From contig OY740808.1 in NCBI GenBank assembly GCA_963514005.1, positions 11,966,001 through 12,030,000 of the forward strand: DNA of 64,000 bases, in the 5' to 3' direction. The translations under genes and the position numbers were made by a program. The notes beneath the pieces are model-generated. The model saw only the letters and a program-made list of their open reading frames with translations, was not told the origin of the DNA and searched no databases. Source of the DNA: Raja brachyura (lineage: Eukaryota). Positions 2,531 through 61,354 of this stretch are shown here, piece by piece (positions within the stretch are counted from its first letter, which is position 1; every line of letters begins with the position of its first letter).

Positions 2531-2578
2531 GTCACGTGGATAGAGATTTGCATGAATAATTAAAACTCGGTGACGTTG
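2531..2578 (+). promoter_or_regulatory. IgL cluster 1 V promoter: E-box (GTCACGTG) - octamer (ATTTGCAT) - CRE-like half site (TGACGT)
   Basis: CACGTG at 2533-2538, ATTTGCAT at 2546-2553 and TGACGT at 2571-2576, about 120 bp upstream of the leader ATG. The same module recurs with identical spacing at cluster 2. Confidence 0.9.
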
Positions 2579-2673
2579 TGATGTCGAGGAGTTCTTAAGG
2601 GGAGATTTCTAAACAACCAGAAGGACCTCTGTCGGAAAACATTTAGATTCTGACCCTCGCCACCACCTTCACC

Positions 2674-2722
2674 ATGTCTGAATGGATTTGCCTTCTCGCC
2701 GCATTCGTGTTCTGTTTCCATA
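2674..2722 (+). CDS. IGL: Ig light chain (type II/lambda) cluster 1, leader exon
   Basis: ACCATG Kozak; MSEWICLLAAFVFCFH + A, then GTAAGT donor at 2723 (phase 1); 90-nt intron ending ttatttcaccAG at 2812. Confidence 0.93.
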
Positions 2723-2812
2723 GTAAGTAGGAAACCTAATCATCAGGCAGCTGATCTTTGCATTCTGCTGATAGATTGTATGTTTACGAATATTAATTTG
2801 TTATTTCACCAG

Positions 2813-3154
2813 CTTCAATCGCAGAGATTTTGGTGACTCAGGACCCAATGTCCATCTCTACTTCTCCGGGAAAATCTGTCAAGATCACTTGTACCCTCTC
2901 AGGAGCTCAGATGAGCAGCTACTACACGAGCTGGTACTGGCAAAAGCCAGGCGGCGCTCCGGTCCTTGTGTGGTATGAGAGCTCCAGAGCTTCTGGAATT
3001 CCAGATCGATTCACCGGTACCGTCGATGAGCCAAATAACAAGATGCACCTGACCATCACCAACGTGCGATCTGAGGATGTTGCTGATTATTACTGTGCAG
3101 TGGCAAGTGCTGGTGTACTTACATTCGGCAAAGGAACCAGACTGAATCTGAGCA
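2813..3154 (+). CDS. IGL: Ig light chain (type II/lambda) cluster 1, germline-joined VJ exon
   Basis: EILVTQDPMSISTSPGKSVKITC...WYWQKPGGAPVLVWY...GIPDRFTG...EDVADYYC-AVASAGVLT-FGKGTRLNLS. V and J are in one frame with no RSS; GTGAGT donor at 3155. Confidence 0.96.
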
Positions 3155-5814
3155 GTGAGTAAAATAATGGCTCTCTGAAAAATGGCATTTGACTAATCGC
3201 CAGCTTTCAATTTTAACCGGTTTTCAAAACGTTCAACAAGTCGTCCTCCAATTCTTGCAATAATACGGAAGCGTATATGACAAACCCAAATTTGCTTTGT
3301 GAATATAAATGGAACTTGACGCCATTATAATATATTAATGCAGGGTAGGTGAATAGCCTCCGGTTAGATTTAAAGAGAACGAACTTACATTTGCGTAGTG
3401 TGATAAAAACTTGGGGGAAATAAACAAACTGGCTGAAGCGCTTAGCGAGTTATTCAGCATCTGTGGAGGCAATTCAGGTTGAGACCCAGCATCCTAAGTT
3501 CTAACTCCAAGGTGTTACGTACACAGATGGTGCCTGGTCCACTGAGTTCGTCCACCAGTTTGCTTTTCTTTGCTCTAGATTTCAGCATCTGCCGTCTACA
3601 TGTTTGCGTGTTAAAATGTTGGAGCGGATCTCGGAGTCACTTATTAGATGATCCTGTTACCGAGCGTTTCAACGTTGAGAGGAGACGGGGATGGTTAGGT
3701 CTGGATGTAACATAGGCAGGTGTGATAGATTCAAAGAAAAAATAGCCGTGTCAGTATCGAAGCCAACACTGATGCACCGATGAAAGTAGAGAATTGTTTG
3801 AGTGTGTGTTTAGCAATGTCCTATGAAGATCTTCGCCGTAAAGTTCGACGAGGAAATACAGTTTGAATTGACTCCCGTGCTAAAACTCATTGTCAGCAAA
3901 TACCAAAATCGCAATTATAAAACCTGTACACGTCGCATTTTAATTCACAGCAAACAGTATGGGCAGCATTTTTCGATCGATGTTGCAGGAGCTGGTGTAT
4001 GAAATTGTTGCAAGGTTTACTCATCTCCAAATTTTGAACATTCAATTAGAACATTCAATTAGAATATGCCTTGAAGCCCGTAACGCAACCTCTGCGTTTT
4101 ACATAGTCGGCGCATGGGCTCCAACAGCGCTCTTGAGTTGAGATGTCAAATAATTTAGCGCAATCTAATAACTAAGTTTATTTTCACCTGTCTTTACATC
4201 GTCCCCTCCCTTCCAGAATTCCAAGCCAAGAACCGGCATCCCGGTATCTAAAACTGTCAAAGGCAATGGACAATATTTATGATATTGTCCATGTTTTCAG
4301 AGCGCAGTCCCGGCCAGTATAACTTCTCTTTGTAGTACAATCTCCGCAACTTAGGAATTAATTTGTGAATGAAGGTTGCAGTCCCTCCATTGTATCAGCA
4401 TTCGTACAATTTGCAGCGGATGCATCTGATATCCAACTCCGCAATTATAGAAAACAATTTAAAGATTTAAAATTTTAAAACCCGCGCTTTTTCAGGAGCT
4501 TGTCAAAAACAATCCCTTTTGGTGCGACAGTATTAACAGCATTTAGTGGTATTGAAACGAGGATCGGGTGAACTGTGTTTTACGATAGCAAGAGAAGGGC
4601 CGTACAATAAATGCAGATGCTTAAATCCTGAATAAAACACAAAGTGCTGGGGAACACAGTGGACCAGGCAGCAGCTGTGAAGCGAATTAACCTGTTCATT
4701 CCCTTCCAAGATGCTGCCTGACCCTCCGAGTTCCTCCAGCATTTTGTGTTTTACACCATAGAGTAGGGCGAACTGGCTTCAGGAGTCTTACTTCATCCCT
4801 TGAGAAGACAATGGATTTTATTTTCACTAAGAGGGAGTTTCCATTGATATCTTACGTTTCACATCCCCAGTATCCTTTGTAGTAGGATAGCAAGGTATTG
4901 GCCTGGATACATCCGGGGACATTTTTTTCGAACTGAAATGTCTTCTTCGGCTTGGTGTATCGATAAACATTGATTGATACTAACTGTCGTTATTGGTTGG
5001 AAAATGCATTTAATGAACTTGCACATTCTGTGACTTTAGCACTCATGACCTTGCCCATGTGTATGTATCGCGGGGAGGATGAAGTTATTTAGCAGACTTT
5101 TGAATTTGTTCTTCCTGTGAACCGGCCGGGATCTTGGTCAATGCGAGTAGGTTGGTTGACGGAATTAACATCCCGACGCCCGAGTGGTAGCCTGATATAC
5201 TTTTGGCGCATCCATCAGAAATAGTGCAAAATTGTGAACAATTGAAGTGGCGAAGGAGGTGGGGGTTAAATTGCAGCGGAAATTATCTGAATTGGACACA
5301 CTGAAATATTTTGAGTTTGGCGGCTAATCTCCAAATCTCGCTGCTTATAATTTCAAGAATGGAGTGAAACGAGACCAAAGCATTTCATTGTAAGAGTCTT
5401 TAATTAATGTTGATTCCTCTGACCGACCCCACCTGCCCCCAGCCCTCCTGAATCACTGATTTTACATCGAAAACATTAAGATTGTCCTAATTATATTTTC
5501 AACCCTAAGGTACGTGAATAGGATGAACATTGAATGGACACAGCGTATTTACGGGACTGCCTCTTTCCAAAATCTCTACCTAAAATCGTTGATTTATTCT
5601 TACATTTGTGAATCGTTTCCAGACCTTTGGACAAACTGTAGTAATGATTTTCTGTTGCACAGACATTTTAACGTGTTCGCAAAATTATATTAATTGTAAA
5701 GTAGTGGAAATAAAAACATAATACATCGGGGCAGGAGTAGACCACCCAATACTTCCAGTTGGCTCCGAAGATACTCAGTTTATATTAATCCTAAATGTCC
5801 TGAAAGATATTCTG

Positions 5815-6301: not shown

Positions 6302-6624
6302 ATCCCCAGCCTCCCGCGGTGTCCGTGCTTGGACCTTCAGAGGAAGAAATCGCGGGAAAGGGCACCGCCACTCTGGTGTGTTTGGTGAACGGGTTTAACC
6401 CGGGCGTTGTGGAGATTGGGTGGACGGTGGACGGCAATGCGAGAAGTGATGGCGTCGACACAGGCCGAGCCCAGCAGGATCAGGACAACACGTTCAGTAC
6501 CAGCAGTTACCTGACTCTGCCAGCATCAGACTGGAACTCACACGAGATTTACTCCTGTGTGGTTAAACACGAGACTCAGGCAAACCCACTGAAGACAAAC
6601 ATCGCCAGATCTGGTTGTGCTTGA
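6302..6624 (+). CDS. IGL: Ig light chain cluster 1, constant (C-lambda-like) exon
   Basis: ctattttccAG acceptor in phase 1; NPQPPAVSVLGPSEEEIAGKGTATLVC...W...YLTL..SDWNSHEIYSCVVKHE...RSGCA*, a C1-set Ig domain with penultimate Cys. Confidence 0.96.
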
Positions 6625-6660
6625 TTCAAAAATATGATGTTTTGAATTGATACATTTGGA

Positions 6661-9877: not shown

Positions 9878-10038
9878 NNNNNNNNNNNNNNNNNNNNNNN
9901 NNNNNNNNNNNNNNNNNNNNNNNNNNNNNNNNNNNNNNNNNNNNNNNNNNNNNNNNNNNNNNNNNNNNNNNNNNNNNNNNNNNNNNNNNNNNNNNNNNNN
10001 NNNNNNNNNNNNNNNNNNNNNNNNNNNNNNNNNNNNNN
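9878..10038. other. Assembly gap (161 N)
   Basis: Run of n characters. Confidence 1.
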
Positions 10039-20037: not shown

Positions 20038-21698
20038 CCATATAACCATATAACCATATAACAATTACACCACGGAAACAGGCCTTCTCGGCCCTTCCAG
20101 TCCGTGCCGACCATTTATTTTCCCCTAGTCCTTTCTACCTGCACTCAGACCATACCCCTCCATTCCCTTCCCGTCCATATACCTATCCACTTTACTTTTA
20201 AATGTTAAAATCGATCCTGCCTCCACCACTTCTGCAGGAAGATCATTCCACACAGCCACCACTCTCTGAGTAAAGACGTTCCCCCTCATGTTACCCCTAA
20301 ACTTCTGTCCTTTAATTCTCATGTCATGCCCTCTTGTTTGAATCTTTCCTACCCTCAATGGGAAAAGCTTATCCACGTCAATTCTGTCTATCCCTTTCAT
20401 CATTTTAAAGACCTCAATCAAGTCCCCCCTTAACCTTATGCGCTCCAAAGAATAAAGACCTAACTTGTTCAAACTTTCTCTGTAACTTAGTTGCTGGAAC
20501 CCAGGCAACATTCTAGTAAATCTCCTCTGTACTCTCTCTATTTTGTTGACATCCTTCCTATAATTAGGCGACCAAAATTGTACACCATACTCCAGAATTG
20601 GTCTTACCAATGCCTTGTACAATTTTAACATTACTTCCCTACTCCTATATTCAATGCTCTGATTTATAAAGGCCAGCACACCAAAAGCTTTCTTTACCAC
20701 CCTATCTACATGCGATTCCACCTTCAGGGAACTATACACAGTTATTCCTAGATCCCTCTGTTCCACAGCATTCCTTAATTCCCTACCATTTACCATGTAC
20801 GTCCTATTTTGATTTGTCCTGCCAAGATGTAGCACCTCACACTTATCACACTCATTAAACTCCATCTGCCATCTTTCAGCCCACTCTTCCAAATGGCCCA
20901 AATCTCTCTGTAGACTTTGAAAATCTACTTCATTATCCACAGCACCCCCTATCTTAGTATCGTCTGCATACTTACTTATCCAATTTTCCACCCCATCATC
21001 TAGATCATTGATGTACATGACAAACAACAGTGGACCCAACACAGATCCCTGAGGCACCCCACTGGTCACCGGCTTCCAACCTGACAAACAGCCATCCACC
21101 ATTACTCTCTGGCATCTCCCATTCAGCCACTGTTGAATCCATCTTGCTACTCCGCCATTAACACCCAAAGATTGAACCTTCTTAACCAACCTTCCATGGG
21201 GAACCTTGTCAAAGCCCTTACTGAAATCCATATGGACAACATCCACATTTGCTCCAGATGCCAGCTGATCTACATCGGTGAGACCAAGCGGACGCTGGGC
21301 GATCGTTTCGCCGAACACCTCCGCTCGGTCCGCAATAACTAACCCGACCTCCCGGTGGCTCAGCACTTCAACTCCCCCTCCCATTCCGTATCCGACCTCT
21401 CGTTCCTGGGCCTCCTCCACGGCCAGAGTGAGCAACACCGCAAGTTGGAGGAACAGCACCTAATATTCCGCTTAGGGAGCCTGCATCCTCTGGGCTTAAA
21501 CATTGAATTTTCTCAATTCTGTTAACCCAGACTGCCTCCTCCCCCTCAGCCCTCGGGCCCTGACATTCCTTCTCCATCTCCCACCCTCCACTGCTTTACC
21601 CTCATCAATTTCCCTAGTAACCTCTTCAAAAAATTCAAGAAGGTTTGTCAAACATGACCTTCCAGGCACAAATCCATGTTGACTGTTCTTGATCAGAC
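20038..21698 (-). mobile_element. Inner (younger) CR1 LINE, 5'-truncated, RT frame open 20125-21246
   Basis: [47 protein letters not shown]; tandem (CCATATAA)3 3' tail at 20038-20061. Confidence 0.92.
21247..21586 (+). mobile_element. Penelope-like element fragment (GIY-YIG endonuclease C-terminus) inserted in CR1
   Basis: CSRCQLIYIGETKRTLGDRFAEHLRSVR...HFNSPSHS...KLEEQHLIFRLG; flanked by TCCAC at 21242-21246 and 21587-21591. Confidence 0.85.
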
Positions 21699-24085: not shown

Positions 24086-24173
24086 CCCTATACGTTTGTT
24101 TCTCTCAGCCCTTTGCAGTGAGCGAGCTCTGCAAACATCAATCTACAATGAACCTCTAATTCCGTAATTCCAC

Positions 24174-24221
24174 GTCACGTGTTCAGCAATTTGCATGAAT
24201 AATTAAAACACAGTGACGTTG
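24174..24221 (+). promoter_or_regulatory. IgL cluster 2 V promoter: E-box - octamer - CRE-like half site
   Basis: GTCACGTG at 24174-24181, ATTTGCAT at 24189-24196, shared GAATAATTAAAAC and TGACGTTG at 24214; same 7- and 17-nt spacers as cluster 1. Confidence 0.9.
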
Positions 24222-24317
24222 CGATGTTTCTGAGTTCATAAGGTGCGGACTCCAAAGAGCCGAGAATCAGATTTCTGTCAGAAACTTGTCGCTTGGGACC
24301 TCGCACTGTCCTTCGCC

Positions 24318-24366
24318 ATGGCTGAATGGGTTCGGGGACTGACCGCACTGGTGTTATTTCTTCGCA
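24318..24366 (+). CDS. IGL: Ig light chain cluster 2, leader exon
   Basis: GCCATGG Kozak; MAEWVRGLTALVLFLR + A; GTGAGT donor at 24367; acceptor atttccgacAG at 24461. Confidence 0.93.
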
Positions 24367-27289: not shown

Positions 27290-27295
27290 AATAAA
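27290..27295 (+). terminator. Probable polyadenylation signal of IgL cluster 2
   Basis: First AATAAA after the C2 stop codon (about 175 nt downstream). Confidence 0.6.
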
Positions 27296-48461: not shown

Positions 48462-48518
48462 TCACTGGTCTTGCATTTGCTGTTGCATTCGTTGCAACAT
48501 TTCCTGCATTCGCCGGAG
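48462..48518 (-). CDS. SEPTIN5: Septin-5 last coding exon
   Basis: LRRMQEMLQRMQQQMQDQ* (TGA at 48462); CAG acceptor; matches the SEPT5 C-terminus. Confidence 0.95.
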   Translation of the reverse strand, partial: LRRMQEMLQRMQQQMQDQ

Positions 48519-48778
48519 CTGCAGAAAGGAAGGTGTAATTACTGAGTTCTATTGTGTGCTGCTACACACTAGCAACAGGCAGAAGCAATGGTTTTTTCAT
48601 CATTGCACAATACACACTGGTTCAACAACCACACATCCCTTATACTAGGACAATGAGTGTCTAAAACGCTTGGGAACATTCATATTCAGATAATGAAAAA
48701 TGCAAACAGCTCAGTTTGCATAAATTGAATACTATGTGAAATTAGATTATATTCAAATACAATGAGGACTGGCAGATG

Positions 48779-50990
48779 ACATAGAAACATAGAAATTTGG
48801 TGCAGGAGTAGGCCATTCGAGCCTGCACCGCCATTCAATATGATCATGGCTGATCATCCAACTCAGTATCCCGTACCTGCCTTCTCTCCATACCCTCTGA
48901 TCCCCCTAGCCACAAGGGTCACATCTAACTCCCTCTTAAATATAGCCAATGAACTAGCCTCAACTACCCTCTGTGGCAGAGAGTTCCAGAGACCCACCAC
49001 TCTCTGTGTGAAAAACTTCCTTCTCATCTCGGCCCTAAAGGATTTCCCCCTTATCCTTATGCTGTGACCCCTTGTCCTGGACCTCCCCAACATCGGGAAC
49101 AATCTTCCTGCATCTAGCCTGTCCAACCCCTTAAGAATCTTGTAAGTTTCTATAAGATCCCCTCTCAATCTCCTAAATTCTAGAGAGTATAAACCGAGTC
49201 TAGTATAAACCGGGTATAAACCGAGTTCTAGAGAGTGGTGAGTCTCTGGAATTCTCTGCCACAGAAGGTAGTTGAGGCCAGTTCATTGGCTATATTTAAG
49301 AGGGCGTTAGATGTGGCACTTATGGCTAAAGGGATCAGGGGGTATGGAGAGAAGGAAGGTACGGGATACTGAGTTGGATGATCAGCCATGATCACATTGA
49401 ATGGCGGTGCAGGCTCGAAGGGCCGAATGGCCTACTCCTGCACCTATTTTCTATGTCTATGTTTCTATGAGTCTATGCAGTCTTTGTTCATAAGACAGTC
49501 CTGACATCCCAGGAATCAGTCTGGTGAACCTTTGCTGCACTCCCTCTATGGCAATAATGTCCTTCCTCAGATTTGGAGACCAGAACTATACGCAATACTC
49601 CAGGTGTGGCCTCACCAAGACCCTATACAACTGAAGTAGAACCTCCCTGCTCCTATATTCAAATCCTTTTGCTATGAAAGCTAACATACCATTCGCTTTC
49701 TTCACTGCCTGCTGTACCTGCATGCCTACTTTCAATGACTGGTGTACCATGACACCCAGGTCGCGCTGCATCTCCCCTTTTCCTAATCGGCCTCCATTTA
49801 GATAATAGTCTGTTTTCCTATTTTTGCCACCAAAGTGGATAACCTCACATTTATCCACATTATACTGCATCTGCCAAACATTTGCCCACTCACCCAGCCT
49901 ATCCAAGTCACCTTGCAGTCTCCTAGCATCCTCCTCATCGCTAACACTGCCCCCCAGCTTAGTGTCATCCCGCAAACTTGGAGATACTGCCTTCAATTCC
50001 CTCATCCAGATCATTTATGTATATTGTAAATAGCTGGGGTCCCAGCACTGAGCCTTGCGGTTCCCCACTAGTCACTGCCTGCCATTGTGAAAACGACCCG
50101 TTTACTCCTACTCTTTGCTTCCTGTTTGCCAGCCAGTTCTCTATCCACATCAATACTGAACCCCCAATGCCATATACTTTAAGTTTATATACTAATCTCT
50201 TATGTGGGACCTTGTCGAAAGCCTTCTGGAAGTCCAGATACACCACATCCACTGGTTCTCCCCCATCCACGCTACTAGTTACATCCTCGAAAAATTCCAC
50301 AAGATTTGTCAGACATGATTTACCTTTCGTAAATCCATGCTGACTTTGTCCAATGATTTCACCACTTTCCAAATGTGCTGCTATCTCATCTTTAATAACT
50401 GACTCTAGCAGTTTCCCCACTACCGATGTTAGACTAACTGGTCTGTAATTCCCCGTTTTCTCTCTCCCCCCCCTTCTTAAAAAGAGGTGTTATGTTTGCT
50501 ACCCGCCAATCCTCAGGAACTACTCCAGAATCTAAAGAGTTTTGAAAGATTATCACTAATGCATCCACTATTTCCGGAGCTACTTTCTTAAGTACTCTGG
50601 GATGCAGCCTATCTGGCCCTGGGGATTTATCGGCCTTTAATCCATTCAATTTACCCAACACCACTTCCCGACTAACCTGGATTTCACTCAAGTACTCCTT
50701 TGACCCGCGGTCCCCTGCTATTTCCGGCAGATTATTTATGTCTTCCTTAGTGAAGACGGAACCAAAGTAGTTATTCAATTGGTCCACCATATCCTTGTTC
50801 CCCATGATCAACTCACCTGTTTCTGACTGCAAGGGACCTACATTTGTTTTAACTAATCTATTTCTCTTCACATATCTATAAAAACTTTTGCAGTCAGTTT
50901 TTATGTTCCCTGCCAGTTTTCTTTCATAATCTATTTTTCCTTTCCTAATCAAGCCCTTTGTCCTTCTCTGCTGGTCTCTGAATTTCTCCC
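48779..50990 (-). mobile_element. CR1 LINE in the last SEPT5 intron, containing an inverted short copy at about 49230-49470
   Basis: [49 protein letters not shown]; (CATAGAAA)n tail. Confidence 0.92.
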
Positions 50991-51633
50991 ATGAGACATG
51001 AGAAATTATCAGGAGATTCCTTAATGACAACTTGATTCCCTTGTCAAATCAGAGACCAAAGGCTAATATTCAAGCTACAATCCAAGTTTCCAAATTCCTG
51101 TATGGATAGGCCTTGTATACTTTAATCTGTCCAATTTCACCTTCTGATGATTCAATGGGAATCCAATTTGAGTGGTTCCTATGTTGGGCAATAAATTTGC
51201 AAATCCAGTTTAATATCAGGCAGAAAATTGAAATTGTAGCTTATTTATAGCCAGATAAACAGTCATTAGAAAGCCCACTACGCAGGAGCACAGGGATTGA
51301 ATTCATTGCTGGGAAAGAACAACATTTCAACACCAATCTTATTTAACTGGCTCTGCCCACTGTTGGTGATTCCATATTCAAGCTAATCATGGCAAAATCT
51401 CATCTCGATTAATTTGCAAATGATTACTTCCTGTCAATTCTCAGAACAATTTAAAAATGAACAGCAAACAAAATGAAACAGTAAAATCACAAATGTTGAT
51501 TAAATATTTTCGGTGAATCTACTCACACAGGTGGCCACCAATAACAGACTCAAGATTGTTACAGACTATTCAGTTACATGGTGTGGATTTCACACCTCAG
51601 ACACTCATCTTTCTTCACACTTCAGCCACTCAC

Positions 51634-51736
51634 CTCTTCGTCTTTCATTTTGATCAGTTTTTCTGTTTCTGCATCCGGAGTTGGCACTGGGAGTATGGGG
51701 AGGGGACTTTCTGCTCGGTTGTCCTGGGTCAATTTA
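51634..51736 (-). CDS. SEPTIN5: Septin-5 exon (103 nt)
   Basis: [34 protein letters not shown], a SEPT5-diagnostic segment; AG/GT boundaries. Confidence 0.95.
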
Positions 51737-52639
51737 CTGTGTAAATTAAAGTATGGAAAAGTCAGTGGCTTTTTTCAGCTGCCTTTGTAATTTTATAATG
51801 TCACATTGGGAATAATAAAATAAATTCTGATCTTCCGATTCCACACTTCCAAACATGACAATAACATGAACTGTGTGAAACTCCCAACGATAAAATGGCC
51901 ACAATTTAGCATGGTGGATAGTGTCGATCCCCTATATTTCCACAAAAATCTCACGAGTGGTTCATAAGGTGCTTGTGGGAAACCCTTGAGAATTTGAGGG
52001 CCACTCATTGATCCGTTCTAATTTGTCTGGAAAAGCCATGAATTTTAGCAGAGTAATTCTTGCAAGGAGTCCTCAGAAAAGGAGTGGTGGAAATTCAAGG
52101 AAATTGAATAATTCACTGATATGAACTTCCATGGAAATTCTGCCCACGCAGTGTCTAAAAGAGTTATTTTTGAGAGAGGACCGCATGTTTTTTCCTTTGC
52201 ACGAGGCATGAACCAAATGATTCCGACAATCCTCGGGTTCTGGCACTGTAATGCTGAGAACTATATCCTGTACTTTGCATCTTTCCCTTCACTCTAAATA
52301 TTGCACTCGAGTTTGGCTTGCTTGTATTTATGGATAATATTATCTGATTTGATTGGATAGTATGCACAAATAAAGCTTTTCAATGTATCGGTACACATGA
52401 CAATAATAAACCTAAAGGTAAACCTAATTCAGCATCCATGGTATATCATCAATGCATGAAACAATAGGTGGAATTGGCTGCCGATAAATTCAGTTTCAAC
52501 ATTGCTCTGTCCAATGCTTAGAGGTGCGTAAGCAGAAATGGGATAGAATTGTGATGTGCTGAATCTGCATTACAGCCAGTGCAGTAAAGCTATTAATAAA
52601 TCTAATAAAATGCATAGATATAAAGTCAGCATGTTGAAA

Positions 52640-53700
52640 ACAGAAACATAGAAACATAAGTGCAGGAGTAGACCCTTTGGCACTCCGAGCCAGCAAAGCC
52701 ATTCAATATGATCATGGCTGATCATCTAAAATCAGTACCCAGTTCCTGCATTTTCCCCATATCCCTTGATTCCTTTAGCCCTAAGAGCTAAATCTAACTC
52801 TCTCTTGAAAACATCCAGTGAATTGGCCTTCACTGCCTTCTGTGGCAGAGAATTCCACAGATTCACAACTCTGGGTGACATTTTTTTTTCATCTCAGTCC
52901 TAAATGGCCTACCCCTTACTTTTTTCCTCATCTCAGTCCTAAATGGCCTACCCCTTATTCTTAAACTGCGACCCCTGGTTCTGGACCCTCCCAACATCAG
53001 GAACATTTTTCCTACATCTAGCCTGTCCAATCTGTTAAGAATTGTATATGTTTCTATCAGATCCAAAACTTCTAAATTCCTGTGAATGCAAGCCCAGTCC
53101 ATCCATTCTTCACCATATGTCGGTCCCAGGAACTAACCTGGTGAACCTACACTGCACTCCCTCAATAGCAATAATGGCCTTCCTCAAATTAGGAGACCAA
53201 AATTACACACAATACTCCAGGTGCGGGCTCACCAGGGCCCTGTACAACTGCATTAGGTCCTCCTTGATCCTAAACTCAAATCCTCTCGCAATGAAGGCCA
53301 ACATGCCATTAGCTCCCTACGCACCGTGCCTCGTTGCACCTCCCCTTTTCCTAATCTGACACCATTCAGATAATAATCGGCCTTCCTGCTCTTGCCACCA
53401 AAGTGGATACCTCACATTTATCCACATTATACTGCATCTGCCCACTCACCCATACTATCCAAGTCACCCTGCCGGCTCTTAACATCCTCATCGCAGCTCA
53501 CACTGCCACCCAGCTTTGTGTCATCTGCAAACTTGGAGATGTTACACTCTAATCTTGCACACTAATCTCTTGTGTGGGACCTTGACAAAGGCTTTTTGAA
53601 AGTCCAGATACACCATATCCACTGGCTCTTCCTTATCCATTCTACTTGTTACATCCTCAAATTTTTCCAGAATTATTTCCCCTTCATAAATCCATGCTGA
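52640..53700 (-). mobile_element. CR1 LINE fragment (SEPT5 intron)
   Basis: (CATAGAAA)n tail; RGRPFRTEMRK; DFQKAFVKVPHKRL. Confidence 0.85.
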
Positions 53701-53997
53701 CGTTGATAGGGTCATAAAGCATAGTGTCACACAGCACAGACATACAGTAGGACCTTCAGCCCAACTCTTCTGTCCAAGATGCCCATCTAAGCTAATCCAA
53801 TTTGCCTGCATTTGATCCATGTCCCATGAAACATTTCTTATTCATGTACCTGTGCAAATGTCCTTTAAATGTTATTGTTGCTCCTGCCTCAACCGCTATC
53901 TCAGGCAGCTTGTTCCACCAATATTGTACCACCAAAAGTTCCTCAGTGGATCTAGTTCCTGATGGGAGGGTGAATGATGGGCAGAAAGAAAACCAAC

Positions 53998-54133
53998 CTT
54001 GTCATTTCCTGAATGCATCGAGCTCTGAAGTTCTCATAGTGAATGTCCCAGGTAACATCCTTCAGGTCCTGCATGTGCGTTCGGATCAGCATGTTCCGCA
54101 GTTTTACAAAATCACAGTGTGCCTGGTTCTCCA
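53998..54133 (-). CDS. SEPTIN5: Septin-5 exon (136 nt)
   Basis: [45 protein letters not shown] (septin unique element). Confidence 0.95.
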
Positions 54134-55484
54134 CTGTAAAAAAATATAATCAAGAAACAATTCTTCAGGTTAGTTATTTATTGACTGCAATGACGAAGTG
54201 TCAGATGATGTCTGAGGAAGGTTCCCCCGACCCAAAACATCACCTAGCCATGTCTTCCAGAGATGCTGCCTGACCTGCTGAGTTACTCCAGTACTTTGTA
54301 TTTTATTTGTAAAACCGACAAACTGCAGTTCATTGCGTCTGCGCTGTTCAGAGGAGAGCCTTAGGAAATCTCACTCAATACCAGATCCACCCCACCCAGC
54401 ACTACCAACTGGACTCAAATATTTCACTCATATTACAAAGTGGAGGTTCAGCCACACTGGACGTGGTGCTCAAACATTTGTCTCAGAGGCAGTAATGCTG
54501 CACTGAGGCAAATGTTCTGTGCAAATAATTCAGTGTAAAGAAGTGGCTGGTAAACTACTGGTAAGTGGCTTGACTCTGAAAAATGTGTAATCAGGAAATA
54601 TACTGTCAATTATTAATTTTTCCTCAATATCAATTGAGTTTTACTTTGGACAGTAAAATTCAGATGGACCTTTTTGCACTTTTCATCTCATTGATGTCCG
54701 AGTTTCACATGGTGTTATTGTCATTTCAGACATAAAGATGTTGCTCCTAACTGTCCGCACATTTCAATGAAACCCTAAAGAACCAGCATTTATGCTTCTG
54801 GCACAATCTTATTGAATGGCAGAGCAAGCATGATAAGTCAAATCGGCTACTCCTGCTTTTATTTTTTATATCTTTACATTCTTGGGATCCAACAGTTAAA
54901 CTGGTTCATATGGAGTCAATGACACTAAAATATTTAAAAGTTACAAATTATTTTTTTGTTTAAAATGTTAAGTAATTAACCACTGTGCCCATTGAAATTG
55001 CAAATTGCATTTAGAATCAGTTTATCATAAATGTTGCACTAAAACTACATGCAAAAATGGGCATACCTTTTGTGTGTAATAAGCCCATTTTCAGCTTTCG
55101 TAATATAATCATACTATTGGCATGTTTTAGTATGTCAAGGAATACTTTGTAAAAAAATTCAGAAGTAATAACTAATTAGGTTTTAAAACACTGCCCAACA
55201 TTATTGGCTCTTGACAGTTTTTGGATTTGGCAATATACTAATTAGTGGGAGTGGAAAAATAAAACTAAACATTTCACAAAAGGGATGCTGGTTTGGGCAT
55301 GATTTAAATTGAGCATGCCCAGGTTGAAATCTTTGACTTTTACCCAAACAAGGACAATCTCAGACGCACCTACATGTAATTTCTTGATGTGTCTCCAAAG
55401 CAGGCAGCCCAATCAATCTAGTCTTTGCTTCTGAATGGTACAAATTGGAGCTTAATACTTTTGTGGGAGTTCGTCTCATTTAGA

Positions 55485-56220
55485 ATGCATTTTGTGCTCC
55501 CGATGTGGTCTTTTTTACATAGGAGAGACCAAGCATAGACTAGGCCACCATTTTGCTGAACACTTGCACACTCTCTCCCAAGGCTGGTTGGAACACCTAG
55601 TTGCTAATTACTTGTTAAAGTCCTCTTCCCATTCCCATTCCCATGCTGACCTTTCTGTCCTCTATTGCCAAAAGGAGACCACACATAAACAGGAAGAAAA
55701 GCACCTCATATTCCTCCTGGGTAGCTTACAAACAAGTGGCTTGAATATAGAATTAACCAATTTAAAATAATACCCCCATTTAAAAACATTGCATACATTT
55801 ACACCACTTCCCACCACCCCAGTCACCCTGCTCCTATCCCCTCTTCCATATGCTTATCTCCCATCCCTCTGCCACATTTCCTATTTATCTCCCTATCCTT
55901 CTCTTTCCCCTGTCCCCTTCCACCAAAATTCTTCCCTCTGACTTCACATTTCACTCCTGTCTTCTTTCCATATCTGACACATGTTTGTGTTCTTTTCACC
56001 TCTAGTCTTTGTCATTTACATCCATCTGTCAAATAGCCCCCCTCATCTGCATCCGCATATCACATTTGTCCCACCCTCACCTCGCTTTTCTAGCTTTCTC
56101 TCCCCAACTCCGAAGAAGGGTGTCAAAACACTGTCTGTCCATCCCTTCACAGATGCTGCCTGACCCACTGAGTTCTTCCAGCACTTTGTTTTTGATCACA
56201 ATTCCAGCATCTGCATTCTC
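55485..56220 (+). mobile_element. Degenerate Penelope-like element 3' part
   Basis: CSRCGLFYIGETKHRLGHHFAEHL...EEKHLIFLLG; pyrimidine-rich UTR; GATGCTGCCTGACCC..CCAGCATCTGCA end. Confidence 0.75.
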
Positions 56221-56593
56221 CCATGACTGATTTGATCAATTTCCTAGTGATTTTGCACAAAACTGATGAGGCTATCCATACAACTGTCTTGGCTAAGGTA
56301 AGATGGCATTCCGTAATGTATTACTCCTACTTTAATATCAGGCAGTGCCCTTTTGCATAATAGTGTCAGATTAATTAGAAAGTGCTCTATATTTTACATT
56401 CATCGACTGAGTTATTTTGCTATCTATCACTTTGTTAATAGCCAATATCTTGCTTGTCATAATAGAGAGGCAAGGAGAGAAAGGAGGGTTTTCTCCTCTA
56501 CTTTAAGATTTAAAATGCTCATATGTCAGGGCCACTTTGGAGCAGGGCAAGTTAGGCAGCCTTTCATTCCCCTCCTTCCCTGAGCTTGCTCAC

Positions 56594-56690
56594 CTTCTAC
56601 AATGCCCCATGGATACAGTCGGCCACGGACTCTCTGACCTCGAGCTTCCACCACTGTGTTGCTGCCGATGACTGCAAAGGGAATGCTCTC
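56594..56690 (-). CDS. SEPTIN5: Septin-5 exon (97 nt)
   Basis: [32 protein letters not shown]; AG/GT boundaries. Confidence 0.95.
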
Positions 56691-57432
56691 CTGTAACCAT
56701 TCAGAAGGAGGAAATTATATTAAGGAGGATTCATAAAAATGAAAAGTGAAGGAAAGACATGGAATATCTAATTGAAAAAAAAAAATAATAATAAGACCAG
56801 CACAGGTTTAATAAATGCCTTATCCCACTGAATGGTTTGTCCTAATGTCTCCTATGAGAAAACAATGAATTAATATAAGAAGATGTTCTGGCTTCTAATG
56901 GCACACTGGGCCATAATTATAGACCTTATCACAAAATATTACCTCTCCCAATAACAATCAAATCAGATTTGATTCCAAAGTTTATCAACAGAGAAGTATA
57001 AAGATCAAATCCTTTTACAAATCTGTATCTTCTTCATAAAGTTGCAACTCTCATGGAAATAGAGCATTGCATTATATAAGGTCTATTATATTAGTTTGTG
57101 TTCTGAGCCCAGGCAAATTAAATGCTGGTCAGGATTAAGGTCCTGTTCAGCTCTGGGAAGGTAGAATCGGGGAAGATCCCGCTGTTTCCACTCACAATTT
57201 GCATCAGGTAGGAACACAGTAAAACGCCAGTTAATCGCAACAAGGATGTGTTACGTAGTGAAACAAGTGCATCAGAGTTGGAGTTATTTAACTGAAGCTG
57301 TCCTCATCAGATCATTTCCTTCTCTAGTATCTGTTGCTGCAGTATCAAGGTCTGGTTCTTTCTAAAAAATAAATCACCACTTCCACCAACACTATTTTGC
57401 TTGAACCTCTCATTCCTTGAATTTCAATTTAC

Positions 57433-57534
57433 CTTTAGTTCTTTATCTTGCTTTTTAAATTCGTCATCTTCATCTGAGTCACATTCAGGAAATTGATATA
57501 TTTTAATTCCGTATTGTTCAATTTCATCTCTTAT
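57433..57534 (-). CDS. SEPTIN5: Septin-5 exon (102 nt)
   Basis: [34 protein letters not shown]; AG/GT boundaries. Confidence 0.95.
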
Positions 57535-57652
57535 CTACATTGGAACAGGGAGGAGCAGAGTAGAGCTCCAGTTAATAAACCAGGCTGAGAAATTCAATTT
57601 GTCAAGAACAGCAATGATTATGACATAGTGAAACAAGACCATGAACTTCAGG

Positions 57653-57880
57653 TTCAAGAAGGAACTGCAGATGCTGGAAAATCGAAGGTAGACAAAAATG
57701 CTGGAGAAACTCAGCGGTTGCGGCAGCATCTATGGAGCGAAGGAAATAGGCAACGTTTCGGGCCGAAACCCTTCTGAAGACTGAAGAAGTCTAAAGAAGG
57801 GTTTCGGCCAGAAACGTTGCCTATATCCTTCGCTCTATAGATGCTGCCGCACCCGCTGCGTTTCTCCAGCATTTTTGTCT
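57653..57880. mobile_element. Hairpin mini-element with 15-bp TSD
   Basis: ACCATGAACTTCAGG at 57638-57652 and 57881-57895; near-perfect inverted arms of about 90 bp. Confidence 0.85.
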
Positions 57881-58858
57881 ACCATGAACTTCAGGGATGA
57901 CAGACATTGATTAGTAGCCATGACAAAGATTCAACAATCAAACAAAGGAGTAATCAGGGAGGTTGTCTCTGAAGACATTGCTGAAGCTAGGAAAATTGGT
58001 GGAAAAACATAAAAGAGTTCCAGACATTTGCAGCATGATATGTGGGGTGAGCGGTGTGGTTGTGGGAGAATGTAAAAAACTGGAAATGCTAGAAATCCAA
58101 AATAAAAATTAAAAAATGCTGGAAATACACTGCAGGTTTGGCCACAACTGTGGGAAGAGAAACAGTTAATGTCAAACTCTATTTTGCTTCCCACAGATGT
58201 GGCCTGACCTACTGATTATATGGGTGGAGGCCTTGGCAGCAAATGTAGGGATGAGTTTGGGTTTAGGAACCAACACACAGTCAGTGAAACTAAAAGTGCA
58301 AGCTATGAAATGGATTGAAAATGTTGCAGAGATGGTGAACTGAGCAGTGAGGATGGGGCAATGGCTGGGGAATCATCAAAGGACCTGAGATTGCAAAATA
58401 ATGGCTGCAATGAAAAAGTGTGGATGTTGGTAAGCGCTGACCAGGTTGACCAGGCACTTGGTTTAATGTCCGGATTGTCTGTACCGCTTGACAATGTTGA
58501 TGAATACTGCCTTCTTGCTGCAGATGATGCATCCCTGAAAGAAGACTGATTGGGCAATAATTATACAGATTGGATCCATTTTGTTTTTTGTTAAAATGAG
58601 TTATCTGGGCAATTTTCCATCTTGTCTTTAAAGGCCAATGTTGCAACAGTAATGGAATTCCAAACCAGATTATATTTGTGAATGACTAGCAATATGGGCT
58701 GTTGATGTCATAGTTTGTTGGTGACAATGTGCCATTCTTCCTGGGATATTAATAACACAAATATTATGGAGAATATGCTTTTTGCCTCTGGCAGCTGAAT
58801 TTTATGTTCTGTTTATTTATCTCTGAGGCACTGTTATATTATGAATGATTTTTCTCAC

Positions 58859-58976
58859 CCTCTCTTTGAGTTTCTTCACCTCGATGGGAGTGAGCGAGTC
58901 TGCTTTTGCAATTATTGGTACAATGTTCACTTTCTGATGTAACGCTTTCATAAACTCCGTGTCCAGTGGCCGCAGC
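58859..58976 (-). CDS. SEPTIN5: Septin-5 exon (118 nt)
   Basis: [39 protein letters not shown], containing the G4 AKAD motif. Confidence 0.95.
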
Positions 58977-59715
58977 CTATACCCAAGCAGATGGAATAAA
59001 TTACACTCACAGTGGGAAGACTATCCCTCCCCACCTCCATAGACCAACCATCTCCAGCGAAAGTACAATCACAGTGAAAGACAAATCTAATCTCAAAATC
59101 TAACCATGGGCCATCGGCAAGTGGCTCCAATGATTCAAGGAGCAATGCTGTCCTTCCAAGTCCCATAATAAGAAGTAAAGCAATGCAAATTTAGCTTCTC
59201 GTGCAGTCTCTTCCACAAGAGACTACAAGAACCACTGATTTATCTGCCAATGTCTTACACAATTGTCTCAAAGAACAATCAGACCCAATTAGCCCAGGAC
59301 TGGACCCACTGTAAAACAACCATAGTACAGTCTAATATGTAAGCCCTTTCAATTCTCTCGCAAAGGTAAAGCAGAATGCATTAATTACAGAACACCGCCC
59401 TGTCCATAACTCACAACACAACCTAAAATACCTTCAGATTACTGGAGCATCTCTAAAACAAATGACAAGCTCTTCTGCAAGGCAAAATGCAGACCATAAA
59501 CTCACCCGAGACTAAGAAAACCAATACAGAAAGTTCAATGAAACCCTGGTGACATTATACTCAAGAGAGGCTCTCCTTTACTCCCAATGAACAAATTGGG
59601 CTGTTAATGTGGCTGATGACACATCATTGAACTTTACTTGCCTTGCCCCTTGATCGAATTTAGTGTGGGAAAGTACTCCAAGTACACTCCAGAAAGGCAT
59701 TTTCCTTCCTGATTA

Positions 59716-60210
59716 CTTCAATTGCATTCGCTGCTCTATGTGTCAACTGCTCTACATCAGTGAGACCAAGCACAGGCTTGGCGATTGCTTCGCCCAACAC
59801 CTCCGCTCGGTTCGCATTTACCAATCTGATCTCCTGGTGGCCCAGCACTTCAGCTCCCCCTCCCATTCCGAATCCGAACTTTCTGCCCTGGGCCTCCTCC
59901 ATGGCCAGAGTGAGTCCCACCGTAAATTGGAGGAGCAGCACCTCATATTTCGCTTGTGCAGTTTACACCCCAGCGGTAGGAACATTGACTTCTCCAATTT
60001 CAGATAGTCCTTGTTTTCTCCTTCCTTCCACTCCCCTTCCTAGCTCTCCCACAGCCAATTGTCTCCGCCTGTTCCTGTCTTCTTCCCGCCCCCCCCACCC
60101 ACCCCCACATCAGTCTGAAGAAGGGTCTTGACCCGAAACGTCACCTATTCCTTCGCTCCATAAATGCTGCCTCACCCGCTGAGTTTCTCCAGCATTTTTG
60201 TCTACCTTCA
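59716..60210 (+). mobile_element. Penelope-like element 3' part (GIY-YIG C-terminus plus terminal repeat with hammerhead-like core)
   Basis: CIRCSMCQLLYISETKHRLGDCFAQHLRSVR..KLEEQHLIFRL..NIDFSNFR*, then CTGAAGAAGGGTCTTGACCCGAAACGTC at 60115-60142. Confidence 0.85.
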
Positions 60211-60355
60211 ATCTCTATCAATGTCTCAGACCACTCTTCTCACCCCTTCTCCACCACCCACAGCTTTATTAACCCCGCAGAATTCATCTCACTCGTTGAG
60301 CAACAGAAGGCACTCACAAATAAACAGTACCCACCAGCTCAACACTCCCTCTTAC

Positions 60356-60490
60356 CCGTGTCCATAGGGAGAGATAAAATACAAGCAGCAGTGGATACGG
60401 TTATCCTGAATGTTCTTGCGATTTAGGCCACTCTCATCACGGAAATACTGCTCGAATTGTTGGTCAATATAGTCAGCTATAGGCTTCCAG
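60356..60490 (-). CDS. SEPTIN5: Septin-5 exon (135 nt)
   Basis: [45 protein letters not shown]; AG/GT boundaries. Confidence 0.95.
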
Positions 60491-61230
60491 CTGCCACAAA
60501 AAAAGAGAGAATTAGATGAAAGAGATCTCTTTCAAAGGAATGTTGGCACACAACTGTCAGCAAATCAGAATAGAGCCAGTGAGATTTCCTCTTGGTTTGT
60601 TTAGAAAGGCAGAGTTTGAAGTGTTGACTTGGTCTGTTCCTGCTCTGCCATTCATGGTTGATGCCATTTTTCTATCCTTTCCCCACAATCATGATCATCT
60701 TGTTTGTAAATAGCTTACCATCACACCAGTTTCAGTCACTTCCCTTGACTGCAGTCTTCATGACTGCAAACGCTCTGAGGGAAGTACTCTGGTACTGTCA
60801 TCCTCAATTGTGCATTCAACAGCTATCTCAGTTCCTCAGAGTAATGTCAGCAACTGTTGGTGATTTCCCATTGTTACGACCAAAAACCTCCAGGCCAATA
60901 TGATACAAAGATAAGGCACGATGGATTGAGGTTTATGTTGCGATACAGCTTAAACATTGATGCAAACATTTTGGAACAAATGACGTGAATCCAACTGTAA
61001 ACATTGTATGATATTCACTTACAGATGATCAGATGTGGGCTATTCAGCAGGTTCCTGGAAGATTAATTATCTTAACCCAGCTTGGCTATTTAACCCTTTA
61101 CATCCAAGCTTGAGGAAAATAATATCCACCATTCTGAGTTTTGAAACTTCTATCATCCTATCCCTTGGAAACAGAGTTCCACATTCCTGTCGCTTTTGTA
61201 AGGAATTGCATTTGCATCACAAAAACTTAC

Positions 61231-61354
61231 CTTTGTATGTTGTTGACTGCATCGCCAAATCCAGGAGTATCAACTATTGTCAACTTTAATTTAACACCTT
61301 TCTCTTCAATGTCCACTGTGTGTTTTAAAATCTCCACTGTTTGATTGATCCTCT
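61231..61354 (-). CDS. SEPTIN5: Septin-5 exon (124 nt); upstream exons (G1 box, N-terminus) lie beyond the window
   Basis: [39 protein letters not shown] with the G3 DTPG motif. All eight exons splice into one open frame. Confidence 0.95.

What the first reader, a model, noticed from the sequence alone, without database searches (positions are those of the whole stretch)
2531..61354. Elasmobranch Ig-lambda clusters directly abut GP1BB-SEPT5: candidate ancestral home of the lambda locus
Seen: the C exon of the second IgL cluster stops at 27114 and the GP1BB stop is at 36452. They are about 9.3 kb apart and convergent, with no recognisable host gene between; SEPT5 follows. Known: human IGL and SEPT5/GP1BB both map to 22q11.2 but are megabases apart. 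Inference: the lambda-SEPT5/GP1BB linkage predates the cartilaginous/bony fish split. That would give synteny evidence, independent of phylogeny, that cartilaginous-fish type II light chains are orthologous to tetrapod lambda. It would also mean this window is the edge of a lambda cluster array.
Basis: partly seen in the sequence, partly recalled or inferred. Interest (0 to 1): 0.8.

Follow-up and report, generated by a model that had tools for sequence, protein, structure and literature searches.

The report
Skate lambda light-chain genes beside GP1BB-SEPT5
Two intact, pre-joined antibody lambda light-chain genes of a skate lie 9.3 kb from the platelet gene GP1BB and its partner SEPT5, and indirect evidence suggests sharks and rays share this neighbourhood, so the lambda locus probably already belonged to the "human 22q11" gene group in early jawed vertebrates.

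Summary
The window holds two intact germline-joined L-VJ-C light-chain miniclusters on the + strand (2546-6624 and 24189-27114). A 9.3-kb spacer follows, with transposon remnants but no recognisable host gene. Then come GP1BB (36452-37009, minus strand, tail-to-tail with the second C exon) and the last eight exons of a SEPT2-group septin upstream of GP1BB on the same strand (61354-48462).

The V and C exons belong to the elasmobranch type II/lambda family, which contains the curated sandbar-shark lambda chain. Their CDR lengths exclude sigma and sigma-2.

New here: lambda genes and GP1BB share one chromosome-size record in 14 shark and ray species. In five orders their RefSeq accession numbers are consecutive or within 10. 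This argues against a misjoin and against dispersal limited to skates.

Published data add that amphibian IGL abuts DGCR2 and that human IGL and SEPT5/GP1BB are both at 22q11.2. Ancient linkage is therefore well supported. "Ancestral home" remains unproven. "Edge of the array" holds only locally: unchecked notes from this scan place further lambda arrays 0.5-0.76 Mb beyond SEPT5.

The result confirms the accepted lambda orthology and is moderately interesting.

The parts
2516..2618 (+). Promoter block of IgL cluster 1, with octamer ATTTGCAT at 2546-2553 (128 nt before the leader ATG), CACGTG and GTGACGT motifs
   Evidence: (repeat D7), 35, 51, 67: the core of about 60 bp is >90% identical to the cluster 2 promoter
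2674..2722 (+). Leader exon of cluster 1 (16 codons + 1 nt; donor GTAAGT)
   Evidence: read from the sequence
2825..3154 (+). Germline-joined VJ exon of cluster 1. V and J (FGKGTRLNL) form one open frame with no RSS. CDR1 is 8 aa, CDR2 is 3 aa. Donor GTGAGT.
   Evidence: (V-set E 7e-18)
6302..6624 (+). C-lambda exon of cluster 1 (stop TGA at 6622-6624; AATAAA at 6661)
   Evidence: C1-set E 2e-25; 92% to Amblyraja and Rhinoraja lambda
9878..10038 (.). Assembly gap (N) in intergenic DNA between the two clusters. It crosses no gene and its continuity is untested.
20125..23090 (-). LINE remnant (reverse-transcriptase ORFs) between the clusters
   Evidence: RVT_1 E 3e-21
24159..24261 (+). Promoter block of cluster 2, with octamer ATTTGCAT at 24189-24196 (129 nt before the leader ATG)
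24318..24366 (+). Leader exon of cluster 2 (donor GTGAGT)
24462..24788 (+). Germline-joined VJ exon of cluster 2 (FGTGTKLNL). CDR1 is 6 aa, CDR2 is 3 aa.
   Evidence: (V-set E 5e-14)
26792..27114 (+). C-lambda exon of cluster 2 (stop TAA at 27112-27114; polyA signal at 27290)
   Evidence: (C1-set E 5.5e-25)
27115..36451 (.). 9.3-kb spacer with SINE-like and LINE remnants (RT frame 33456-34448 +) and no recognisable host gene.
36452..37009 (-). GP1BB, single coding exon (signal peptide, LRRNT, one LRR, LRRCT, TM). PolyA signal at 35777.
   Evidence: human GPIb-beta E 6.7e-36; orthologues named GP1BB, 62-80% identity in sharks and rays
48462..61354 (-). Last eight exons of a SEPT2-group septin in the SEPT5 position, upstream of GP1BB on the same strand: 61354-61231, 60490-60356, 58976-58859, 57534-57433, 56690-56594, 54133-53998, 51736-51634, 48518-48462. 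The 5' exons lie beyond the window. The introns hold LINE remnants.

Best explanation
The window shows a real stretch of a skate (Rajiformes) chromosome. A run of immunoglobulin lambda (type II) light-chain miniclusters ends tail-to-tail against the conserved gene pair SEPT5 -> GP1BB. Each minicluster is a self-contained gene: an octamer promoter, a leader exon, a VJ exon already joined in the germline, a 2-3 kb J-C intron and one C exon. It therefore needs no RAG recombination. By inference, diversity comes from the many diverged clusters and from somatic mutation. The lambda/GP1BB neighbourhood is shared by sharks and rays, so it dates at least to the elasmobranch ancestor. Human IGL and SEPT5/GP1BB are both at 22q11.2, and amphibian IGL abuts DGCR2. 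The simplest reading is that lambda already sat in the 22q11-type linkage group before cartilaginous and bony vertebrates split, and that later local rearrangements changed its exact neighbours. Shown here: the gene content, intactness, isotype family and orientation, plus same-chromosome linkage in 14 species. Inferred: kb-scale adjacency in other species (from accession order), the ancestral state, and expression.
For: Gene models: searches give the octamers at matching offsets, canonical splice sites, intact frames and polyA signals. Isotype: the Mobula homologue P0003 retrieved 120 elasmobranch and holocephalan chains, among them the curated 'Ig lambda chain - sandbar shark' AAC59643.1. 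The window's C exons are 84-92% and its V exons 70-82% identical to skate members, and they nest in the batoid clade. Pristis XP_051887749 and XP_051887751 are numbered next to XP_051887747, which PMC12227049 labels IgL-lambda. CDR2 is 3 aa and CDR1 is 8 or 6 aa, which excludes sigma (CDR2 9-10) and sigma-2 (8 and 7) by the criteria of PMC5985310. The best single-domain PDB alignment of C2 shown is to a human C-lambda segment. GP1BB. Septin. Cross-species linkage: 'longest_contig' is identical for lambda and GP1BB in Pristis, Mobula birostris, M. hypostoma, Hypanus, Hemitrygon, Narcine, Heptranchias, Heterodontus, Carcharodon, Cetorhinus, Hemiscyllium, Chiloscyllium punctatum, C. plagiosum and Mustelus. 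RefSeq numbers, GP1BB versus lambda: Mustelus XP_078082987-8 vs XP_078082989-93; Narcine XP_069789812-4 vs XP_069789815 and XP_069789817; Heptranchias XP_067861657-61 vs XP_067861665, XP_067861666 and XP_067861668; Hemiscyllium XP_060700050 vs XP_060700057-9; Hemitrygon XP_072911816-7 vs XP_072911823. Literature: PMC7555362, PMC4487986, PMC9911811.
Against: That RefSeq numbers follow gene order is an assumption. It is supported only by internal consistency: tandem lambda genes and isoforms are numbered consecutively, and the offsets are similar in Hemiscyllium (197) and Chiloscyllium punctatum (181). In Pristis, Heterodontus and C. punctatum the sampled lambda genes are 180-400 numbers away from GP1BB, so adjacency is not shown there. 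No kappa, sigma or sigma-2 outgroup was placed in the trees. No holocephalan or bony-fish position was obtained. Sterlet and gar lambda are beside IFT81 (PMC5985310). The septin is called SEPT5 from its position only.
Confidence: 0.75

Rival explanations
1. Secondary arrival. Lambda miniclusters, which duplicate and move readily in cartilaginous fish, were placed next to GP1BB in the elasmobranch stem lineage. On this view the shared human 22q11 address is only loose macrosynteny or coincidence, and the site is not positionally orthologous to the tetrapod IGL locus.
For: The exact neighbours differ between lineages: GP1BB here, DGCR2 in amphibians and IFT81 in sterlet and gar. Other species carry a second lambda group on the same chromosome, and the scan's notes report arrays on both sides of SEPT5, so the arrays do spread. 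Some IgL clusters sit near TCR alpha/delta-IgH in sharks.
Against: That record also carries GP1BB in 14 of them. Lambda is next to a DiGeorge-region gene in amphibians and elasmobranchs alike, and lies in the same band in human.
Confidence: 0.17
2. Assembly artefact: the IgL clusters and GP1BB were joined wrongly inside the repeat-rich 27-36 kb spacer.
For: The spacer carries SINE and LINE remnants. The scaffold has one gap nearby.
Against: There are no N between 10039 and 64000. Runs X1 and X2 hold 0.82 and 0.77 of the sampled 31-mers of 27000-36600, though they may be the source sample. Independent assemblies of five other orders number GP1BB and lambda genes consecutively.
Confidence: 0.04
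3. The clusters are not lambda but another isotype (kappa/type III, sigma or sigma-2/type I) that automatic annotation mislabelled.
For: The 'lambda-1 light chain-like' names are automatic. No outgroups were included in the trees. C-kappa and C-lambda are poorly resolved in published trees.
Against: The same family contains the curated sandbar-shark lambda chain and the expert-labelled Pristis IgL-lambda. The CDR lengths exclude sigma and sigma-2. Identity to family members is 60-92%, against at most 49% between isotypes.
Confidence: 0.04

Closest known systems
Germline-joined type II (lambda) light-chain clusters of sandbar shark and little skate
   Same: The L-VJ-C minicluster layout, with V and J fused in the germline, one C exon and a penultimate C-terminal Cys. 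The window's exons belong to the same sequence family: one search includes AAC59643.1, and Table 2 of PMC5985310 equates type II with lambda.
   Different: Nothing essential differs. These are two further, mutually diverged members (V 61% and C 74% aa identity). What is new is their mapped position beside GP1BB.
Tetrapod IGL locus (human 22q11.2; Xenopus and axolotl IGL flanked by DGCR2)
   Same: The same isotype lineage, and linkage to DiGeorge-region genes of the 22q11 block (PMC7555362, PMC4487986, PMC9911811).
   Different: Tetrapod IGL has a translocon or J-C cassette organisation that needs V-J recombination. Its immediate neighbour is DGCR2 or TOP3B/VPREB, not GP1BB. In human it is megabases from SEPT5/GP1BB (own knowledge, about 2-3 Mb).
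[quoted passage not shown]
   Same: A septin lies immediately upstream of single-exon GP1BB on the same strand. The human order is CLDN5-SEPT5-GP1BB-TBX1, with a read-through transcript (PMC4487986).
   Different: Here 11.4 kb of transposon-rich DNA separates the septin stop (48462) from the GP1BB ATG (37009). Downstream of GP1BB lie IgL clusters, where human has TBX1.
Elasmobranch antigen-receptor complex (IgH isotypes and some IgL near TCR alpha/delta and PSMB5; PMC12227049)
   Same: A mapped chromosomal home for elasmobranch Ig miniclusters, with conserved synteny to a human antigen-receptor region.
   Different: A different linkage group (human chr14-like rather than chr22-like). That paper does not describe the lambda-GP1BB/SEPT5 linkage and states that the genomic distribution of the miniclusters is not well known.

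Membership tests
Cartilaginous-fish type II / lambda IgL minicluster | One leader, one V(J) and one C exon within a few kb, each cluster with its own promoter | tested here: met
   Cluster 1 spans 2546-6624 and cluster 2 spans 24189-27114. The octamers sit 128 and 129 nt before the ATG, the splice sites are canonical and polyA signals are present.
Cartilaginous-fish type II / lambda IgL minicluster | V and J fused in the germline, in frame, with no RSS (the joined form typical of skates) | tested here: met
   Single open frames run through YYC...FG(K/T)GT(R/K)LNL.
Cartilaginous-fish type II / lambda IgL minicluster | V and C sequences group with recognised lambda/type II chains | tested here: met
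   The family found contains the curated sandbar-shark lambda chain. The window's exons are 70-92% identical to skate members and nest in the batoid clade. Kappa and sigma outgroups were not included.
Cartilaginous-fish type II / lambda IgL minicluster | CDR1/CDR2 lengths compatible with lambda and not with sigma (CDR2 9-10) or sigma-2 (8 and 7) | tested here: met
   CDR1 is 8 aa in cluster 1 and 6 aa in cluster 2, and CDR2 is 3 aa in both, read from the sequence. The criteria come from PMC5985310. These lengths do not separate lambda from kappa.
Cartilaginous-fish type II / lambda IgL minicluster | Lambda-type RSS arrangement (V-23 / J-12) | not testable with these tools
   Germline-joined genes keep no RSS.
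Cartilaginous-fish type II / lambda IgL minicluster | Expressed as light chain in B cells | not tested
GP1BB (platelet glycoprotein Ib beta) | Single-exon type I membrane protein with LRRNT, one LRR, LRRCT and a TM helix, and closest relatives that are GP1BB | tested here: met
   Pfam finds LRRNT and LRR. Human GPIb-beta 8wfs_c aligns at E 6.7e-36 over residues 22-177. Orthologues named GP1BB run from sharks to amphibians.
SEPT5 (septin 5) | Septin GTPase core (G3 DTPGFGD, G4 AKAD) of the SEPT2 subgroup | tested here: met
   The exon peptides match the septin family. For exon 60490-60356 the best hits are Septin-1 and Septin-2, at E 2.5e-19 and 1.5e-18. For exon 54133-53998 the best hit is Septin-7.
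SEPT5 (septin 5) | Lies directly upstream of GP1BB on the same strand | tested here: met
   The septin stop is at 48462 and the GP1BB ATG at 37009, both on the minus strand. The human order comes from PMC4487986.
SEPT5 (septin 5) | Sequence closer to SEPT5 than to SEPT4, SEPT2 or SEPT1 | not testable with these tools
   Neither SEPT4 nor SEPT5 appeared among the PDB matches. Exons had to be searched singly, so the length window of the word search excludes full-length septins.
Conserved 22q11-type linkage of IGL with DiGeorge-region genes | Lambda genes and GP1BB on the same chromosome in several independent lineages | tested here: met
   Identical record lengths in 14 elasmobranch species. Human and amphibian data come from the literature.
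Conserved 22q11-type linkage of IGL with DiGeorge-region genes | kb-scale adjacency of lambda and GP1BB outside this genome | tested here: inconclusive
   RefSeq numbers are consecutive or within 10 in five species, but 24-64 numbers apart in three more and 180-400 apart in another three. No coordinates were available.

The most novel reading that the evidence does not exclude
The GP1BB/SEPT5-flanking position is the original gnathostome lambda locus. Tetrapod IGL (next to DGCR2 in amphibians, 2-3 Mb away in human) and the IFT81-linked lambda of sturgeon and gar would then derive from it by local inversions within one ancestral block. The SEPT5-GP1BB-DGCR block would become a positional landmark for finding lambda remnants in lineages thought to lack lambda, and for testing whether kappa and sigma sit on its 2R paralogons.
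Probability: 0.3. Interest if true: 0.6.

Novelty: new member of a known kind. Interest (0 to 1): 0.42.

Why it matters
A 2025 paper from the field (PMC12227049) says the genomic distribution of cartilaginous-fish Ig miniclusters is "not well known". It maps the IgH isotypes and only "some IgL". Here, in every elasmobranch species that could be checked, all listed lambda-family genes lie on a single chromosome-size record. That chromosome also carries GP1BB, and lambda genes probably lie right beside it. This gives positional evidence, independent of trees, that type II chains and tetrapod lambda descend from one locus. It also provides a landmark for comparative mapping of light-chain loci. 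It does not change the accepted view of lambda orthology; it supports it.

Tried and rejected
- **Read laying.** Pfam and Rfam queries and local BLAST databases were cut at 34650 and 34701.
- **Papers not held.** PMC7094790 and PMC12010099 are not held. No supplement is held for PMC12227049.
- **Word search with the C-exon ORF alone** returned only 4 hits because of the length window. I therefore used the database protein P0003 as the full-length query. I did not build or search a joined exon model of the IgL genes or the septin. Exons were searched one by one, and septin frame continuity was checked by phase arithmetic only.
- **Big representative search and structure prediction** were not used.
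- **Extra Ig or GP1BB-like fragments.** tblastn found none in the window. This was prompted by an earlier scan note about LRR-TM remnants in a neighbouring cluster.
- **Gap flanks.** They share no repeat copy that could size the gap.
- **Rfam** at gathering threshold found nothing.
- **Trees.** The V and C trees do not separate GP1BB-proximal from distal lambda genes. C domains group by species, so positional orthology of sub-arrays cannot be read from them.
- **Literature.** Searches for a published lambda-SEPT5/GP1BB linkage in cartilaginous fish found none in the held library.

Full report
**What is in the window**

Six-frame ORFs and Pfam show two V-set ORFs that run straight through a J motif: 2830-3162 with FGKGTRLNL and 24419-24799 with FGTGTKLNL. 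They also show two C1-set ORFs ending at 6624 and 27114, all on the + strand.

Reading the DNA gives complete miniclusters:
- Cluster 1: octamer ATTTGCAT 2546-2553, leader 2674-2722 (donor GTAAGT), VJ exon 2825-3154 (donor GTGAGT), C exon 6302-6624 (stop TGA) and AATAAA at 6661.
- Cluster 2: octamer 24189-24196, leader 24318-24366, VJ exon 24462-24788, C exon 26792-27114 (stop TAA) and a polyA signal at 27290.

The two promoter blocks share a core of about 60 bp that is more than 90% identical. The core holds CACGTG, the octamer and GTGACGT, and the octamers lie 128 and 129 nt before the ATG. This is better conserved than the V exons and suggests working promoters.

The clusters are old paralogues, with 61% amino-acid identity in V and 74% in C. 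tblastn finds no other V, C or GP1BB-like piece in the window.

**The gap**

The only N run is 9878-10038. It lies 3.2 kb after the polyA signal of cluster 1 and 14 kb before the promoter of cluster 2, in AT-rich intergenic DNA. The only ORF crossing it is made of X. Its immediate flanks match no repeat copy that could size it.

Continuity across the gap is untested. It matters only for whether cluster 1 is linked to the rest. It does not bear on the cluster 2-GP1BB junction, because 10039-64000 has no N.

**GP1BB and the septin**

The 185-codon ORF at 36452-37009 on the minus strand has LRRNT and one LRR. It aligns with human platelet glycoprotein Ib beta (8wfs_c) over residues 22-177, including the transmembrane helix, at E 6.7e-36. 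Its word-search relatives are named GP1BB, from sharks (62-80% identity) to coelacanth and amphibians.

Upstream on the same strand lie eight exons with AG/GT borders: 61354-61231, 60490-60356, 58976-58859, 57534-57433, 56690-56594, 54133-53998, 51736-51634 and 48518-48462. Their phases fit one another by arithmetic.

They carry the septin G3 (DTPGFGD) and G4 (AKAD) motifs. One exon matches Septin-1 and Septin-2 best and another matches Septin-7 best, and neither SEPT4 nor SEPT5 appeared among the PDB matches. I call the gene SEPT5 because it occupies the SEPT5 position of the human SEPT5-GP1BB tandem (PMC4487986). Discrimination from SEPT4 at the sequence level was not possible.

The septin stop is 11.4 kb from the GP1BB ATG. 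The interval and the introns hold LINE remnants.

**The junction**

The stop of C2 (27114) and the stop of GP1BB (36452) are 9,338 bp apart and the genes are convergent. The spacer holds SINE-like repeats and a LINE RT remnant at 33456-34448. The ten longest untested stop-to-stop frames gave no Pfam family, and Rfam found nothing.

**Isotype**

The C-exon ORF alone found only four hits because of the length window. They were ray and shark 'lambda-1 light chain-like' proteins and one contaminant. Using the full-length Mobula homologue P0003 as the query gave 120 listed relatives, all chondrichthyan. They include the curated sandbar-shark entries 'Ig lambda chain' (AAC59643.1) and 'immunoglobulin lambda light chain'.

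The window's exons fit this family closely:
- C1 is 92% identical to Amblyraja and Rhinoraja members.
- C2 is 84% identical to a Logan protein and 83% to a Rhinoraja member.
- VJ1 is 82% and VJ2 is 70% identical to Rhinoraja members.
- In maximum-likelihood trees both clusters nest inside the batoid clade next to skate sequences, with SH-aLRT 95-98.

The source is therefore a skate.

Pristis XP_051887749 and XP_051887751 belong to this family and are numbered beside XP_051887747, which PMC12227049 uses as 'IgLL'. Table 2 of PMC5985310 equates shark and skate type II and NS3 with lambda.

By IMGT counting, CDR1 is 8 aa in cluster 1 and 6 aa in cluster 2, and CDR2 is 3 aa in both. This excludes sigma (CDR2 9-10) and sigma-2 (8 and 7) by the criteria of that paper. 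The best single-domain PDB alignment of C2 shown is to a human C-lambda segment at 70 bits.

I did not put kappa or sigma outgroups in a tree. That remains the formal test.

**Is the linkage peculiar to this genome?**

This is the main new result. The word searches report, for each protein, the length of the record that carries it. For lambda-family genes and for GP1BB these lengths are identical in 14 species:

| Species | Record length (bp) |
|---|---|
| Pristis pectinata | 45,060,308 |
| Mobula birostris | 250,740,734 |
| Mobula hypostoma | 252,427,829 |
| Hypanus sabinus | 167,937,546 |
| Hemitrygon akajei | 179,570,447 |
| Narcine bancroftii | 321,486,706 |
| Heptranchias perlo | 48,464,211 |
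| Heterodontus francisci | 83,741,193 |
| Carcharodon carcharias | 146,975,297 |
| Cetorhinus maximus | 126,028,485 |
| Hemiscyllium ocellatum | 60,358,015 |
| Chiloscyllium punctatum | 103,522,493 |
| Chiloscyllium plagiosum | 54,599,976 |
| Mustelus asterias | 109,010,392 |

The family is therefore not scattered over the genome.

RefSeq protein numbers are also strikingly close:

| Species | GP1BB | Lambda genes |
|---|---|---|
| Mustelus | XP_078082987-8 | XP_078082989-93 |
| Narcine | XP_069789812-4 | XP_069789815, XP_069789817 |
| Heptranchias | XP_067861657-61 | XP_067861665, XP_067861666, XP_067861668 |
| Hemiscyllium | XP_060700050 | XP_060700057-9 |
| Hemitrygon | XP_072911816-7 | XP_072911823 |

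Mobula birostris and C. plagiosum are 24-30 numbers apart, and Carcharodon is 38-64 apart.

That these numbers follow gene order is my assumption. The data support it in two ways. Tandem lambda genes and isoforms are numbered consecutively. The distal lambda group lies 197 numbers before GP1BB in Hemiscyllium and 181 before it in Chiloscyllium punctatum, in two separate annotations.

In Pristis, Heterodontus and C. punctatum the sampled lambda genes are 180-400 numbers away. Mustelus, Heptranchias and Hemiscyllium each have a second lambda group several hundred numbers away. The common plan therefore seems to be one lambda group against the 3' end of GP1BB and at least one more elsewhere on the same chromosome.

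This makes a misjoin in the window very unlikely. It also refutes dispersal specific to skates.

**Is the window the edge of the array?**

Only locally. Earlier unchecked notes from this scan report:
- clusters 13 kb and 37.5 kb before the window (s1-880877, s1-880814);
- arrays called lambda 510, 558, 622 and 757 kb beyond the window's end, on the SEPT5 side (s1-880944, s1-880781, s1-881103, s1-881436).

I could not read those stretches. Together with the second groups seen in other species, they suggest that GP1BB-SEPT5 sits between lambda arrays. The scan thus noted these light-chain arrays before on other DNA of this genome, but none of its notes holds the words GP1BB, SEPT5 or septin.

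**How old is the linkage?**

- Human IGL is at 22q11.2 and spans about 1 Mb (PMC7555362).
- SEPT5 and GP1BB lie in the typical 22q11.2 deletion region in the order CLDN5-SEPT5-GP1BB-TBX1 (PMC4487986).
- In Xenopus tropicalis and axolotl the IGL locus is flanked directly by DGCR2, another DiGeorge-region gene (PMC9911811).
- In sterlet and gar the lambda gene or pseudogene lies beside IFT81 (PMC5985310).

Lambda next to DiGeorge-region genes in both elasmobranchs and amphibians, and in the same band in human, is most simply explained by inheritance from the common ancestor of jawed vertebrates. Which gene was the original neighbour, and whether the abutment on GP1BB is ancestral or arose in the elasmobranch stem, cannot be decided here. 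No position was obtained for a chimaera, coelacanth or bichir.

**Contiguity evidence that I could and could not get**

Runs X1 and X2 (organism A, one sample, possibly the source) hold 0.82 and 0.77 of the sampled 31-mers of 27000-36600. Another sample of organism A holds 0.21. Two other organisms hold 0.34-0.46, so close relatives carry much of this spacer.

**Novelty and verdict**

Germline-joined type II clusters in skates are long known. Six full-text searches found no paper describing lambda beside SEPT5/GP1BB in cartilaginous fish. PMC12227049 says the distribution of the miniclusters is not well known.

The finding is a sound and probably unpublished synteny observation. It supports an already accepted orthology and does not reveal a new kind of system.

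Noticed in passing
P0001 (hit of window 26740-27111): A 125-aa 'hypothetical protein HBI98_21985 [Aeromonas veronii]' is really a J-plus-C lambda light-chain fragment, 68% identical to the window's C2. It looks like elasmobranch DNA contaminating a bacterial assembly.
   Followed up: partly
window 2516-2618 and 24159-24261: The two cluster promoters keep a core of about 60 bp that is more than 90% identical (CACGTG, octamer ATTTGCAT, GTGACGT). This is more conserved than the V exons (about 79% nt) and makes the core a candidate minimal lambda promoter.
   Followed up: partly
window 37010-48461: The septin stop and the GP1BB start are 11.4 kb apart and the interval is full of transposon remnants (for example the RT/ALKBH8_N-like ORF at 40317-41117). 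The gap is much smaller in human (own knowledge). Whether SEPT5-GP1BB read-through still occurs here is open.
   Followed up: no
V tree of lambda-family proteins: Inside the lambda family a long-branched V subfamily (branch 0.67, SH-aLRT 100, 35 rows) is shared by sharks and batoids. It may be the 'long-CDR2 V on lambda C' lineage flagged by earlier scan notes 622-757 kb beyond the window.
   Followed up: no
C tree of lambda-family proteins: In sharks, C domains of GP1BB-proximal and distal lambda genes are nearly identical within a species (Mustelus, Hemiscyllium, Heptranchias). This suggests concerted evolution or recent duplication between sub-arrays. Batoids keep several old C lineages.
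   Followed up: partly
window 764-862, 5953-6051, 7141-7203, 8451-8561, 13318-13396, 17693-17755, 24010-24072, 25747-25857, 28969-29031: A SINE-like repeat family, with at least 9 copies in the first 30 kb and further matches in the septin introns. Copies also sit inside the J-C introns of both clusters and just upstream of the cluster 2 promoter.
   Followed up: no
window 20125-23090, 33456-34448, 48863-51030, 62789-63607: Several LINE reverse-transcriptase remnants of at least two types. Three related copies lie on the minus strand, two of them in the septin gene region.
   Followed up: no
window 34659-34697: The reads tool's filter tripped on this 39-base place, just after the LINE RT frame. 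The tool states this is no evidence of anything. I did not examine it further.
   Followed up: no
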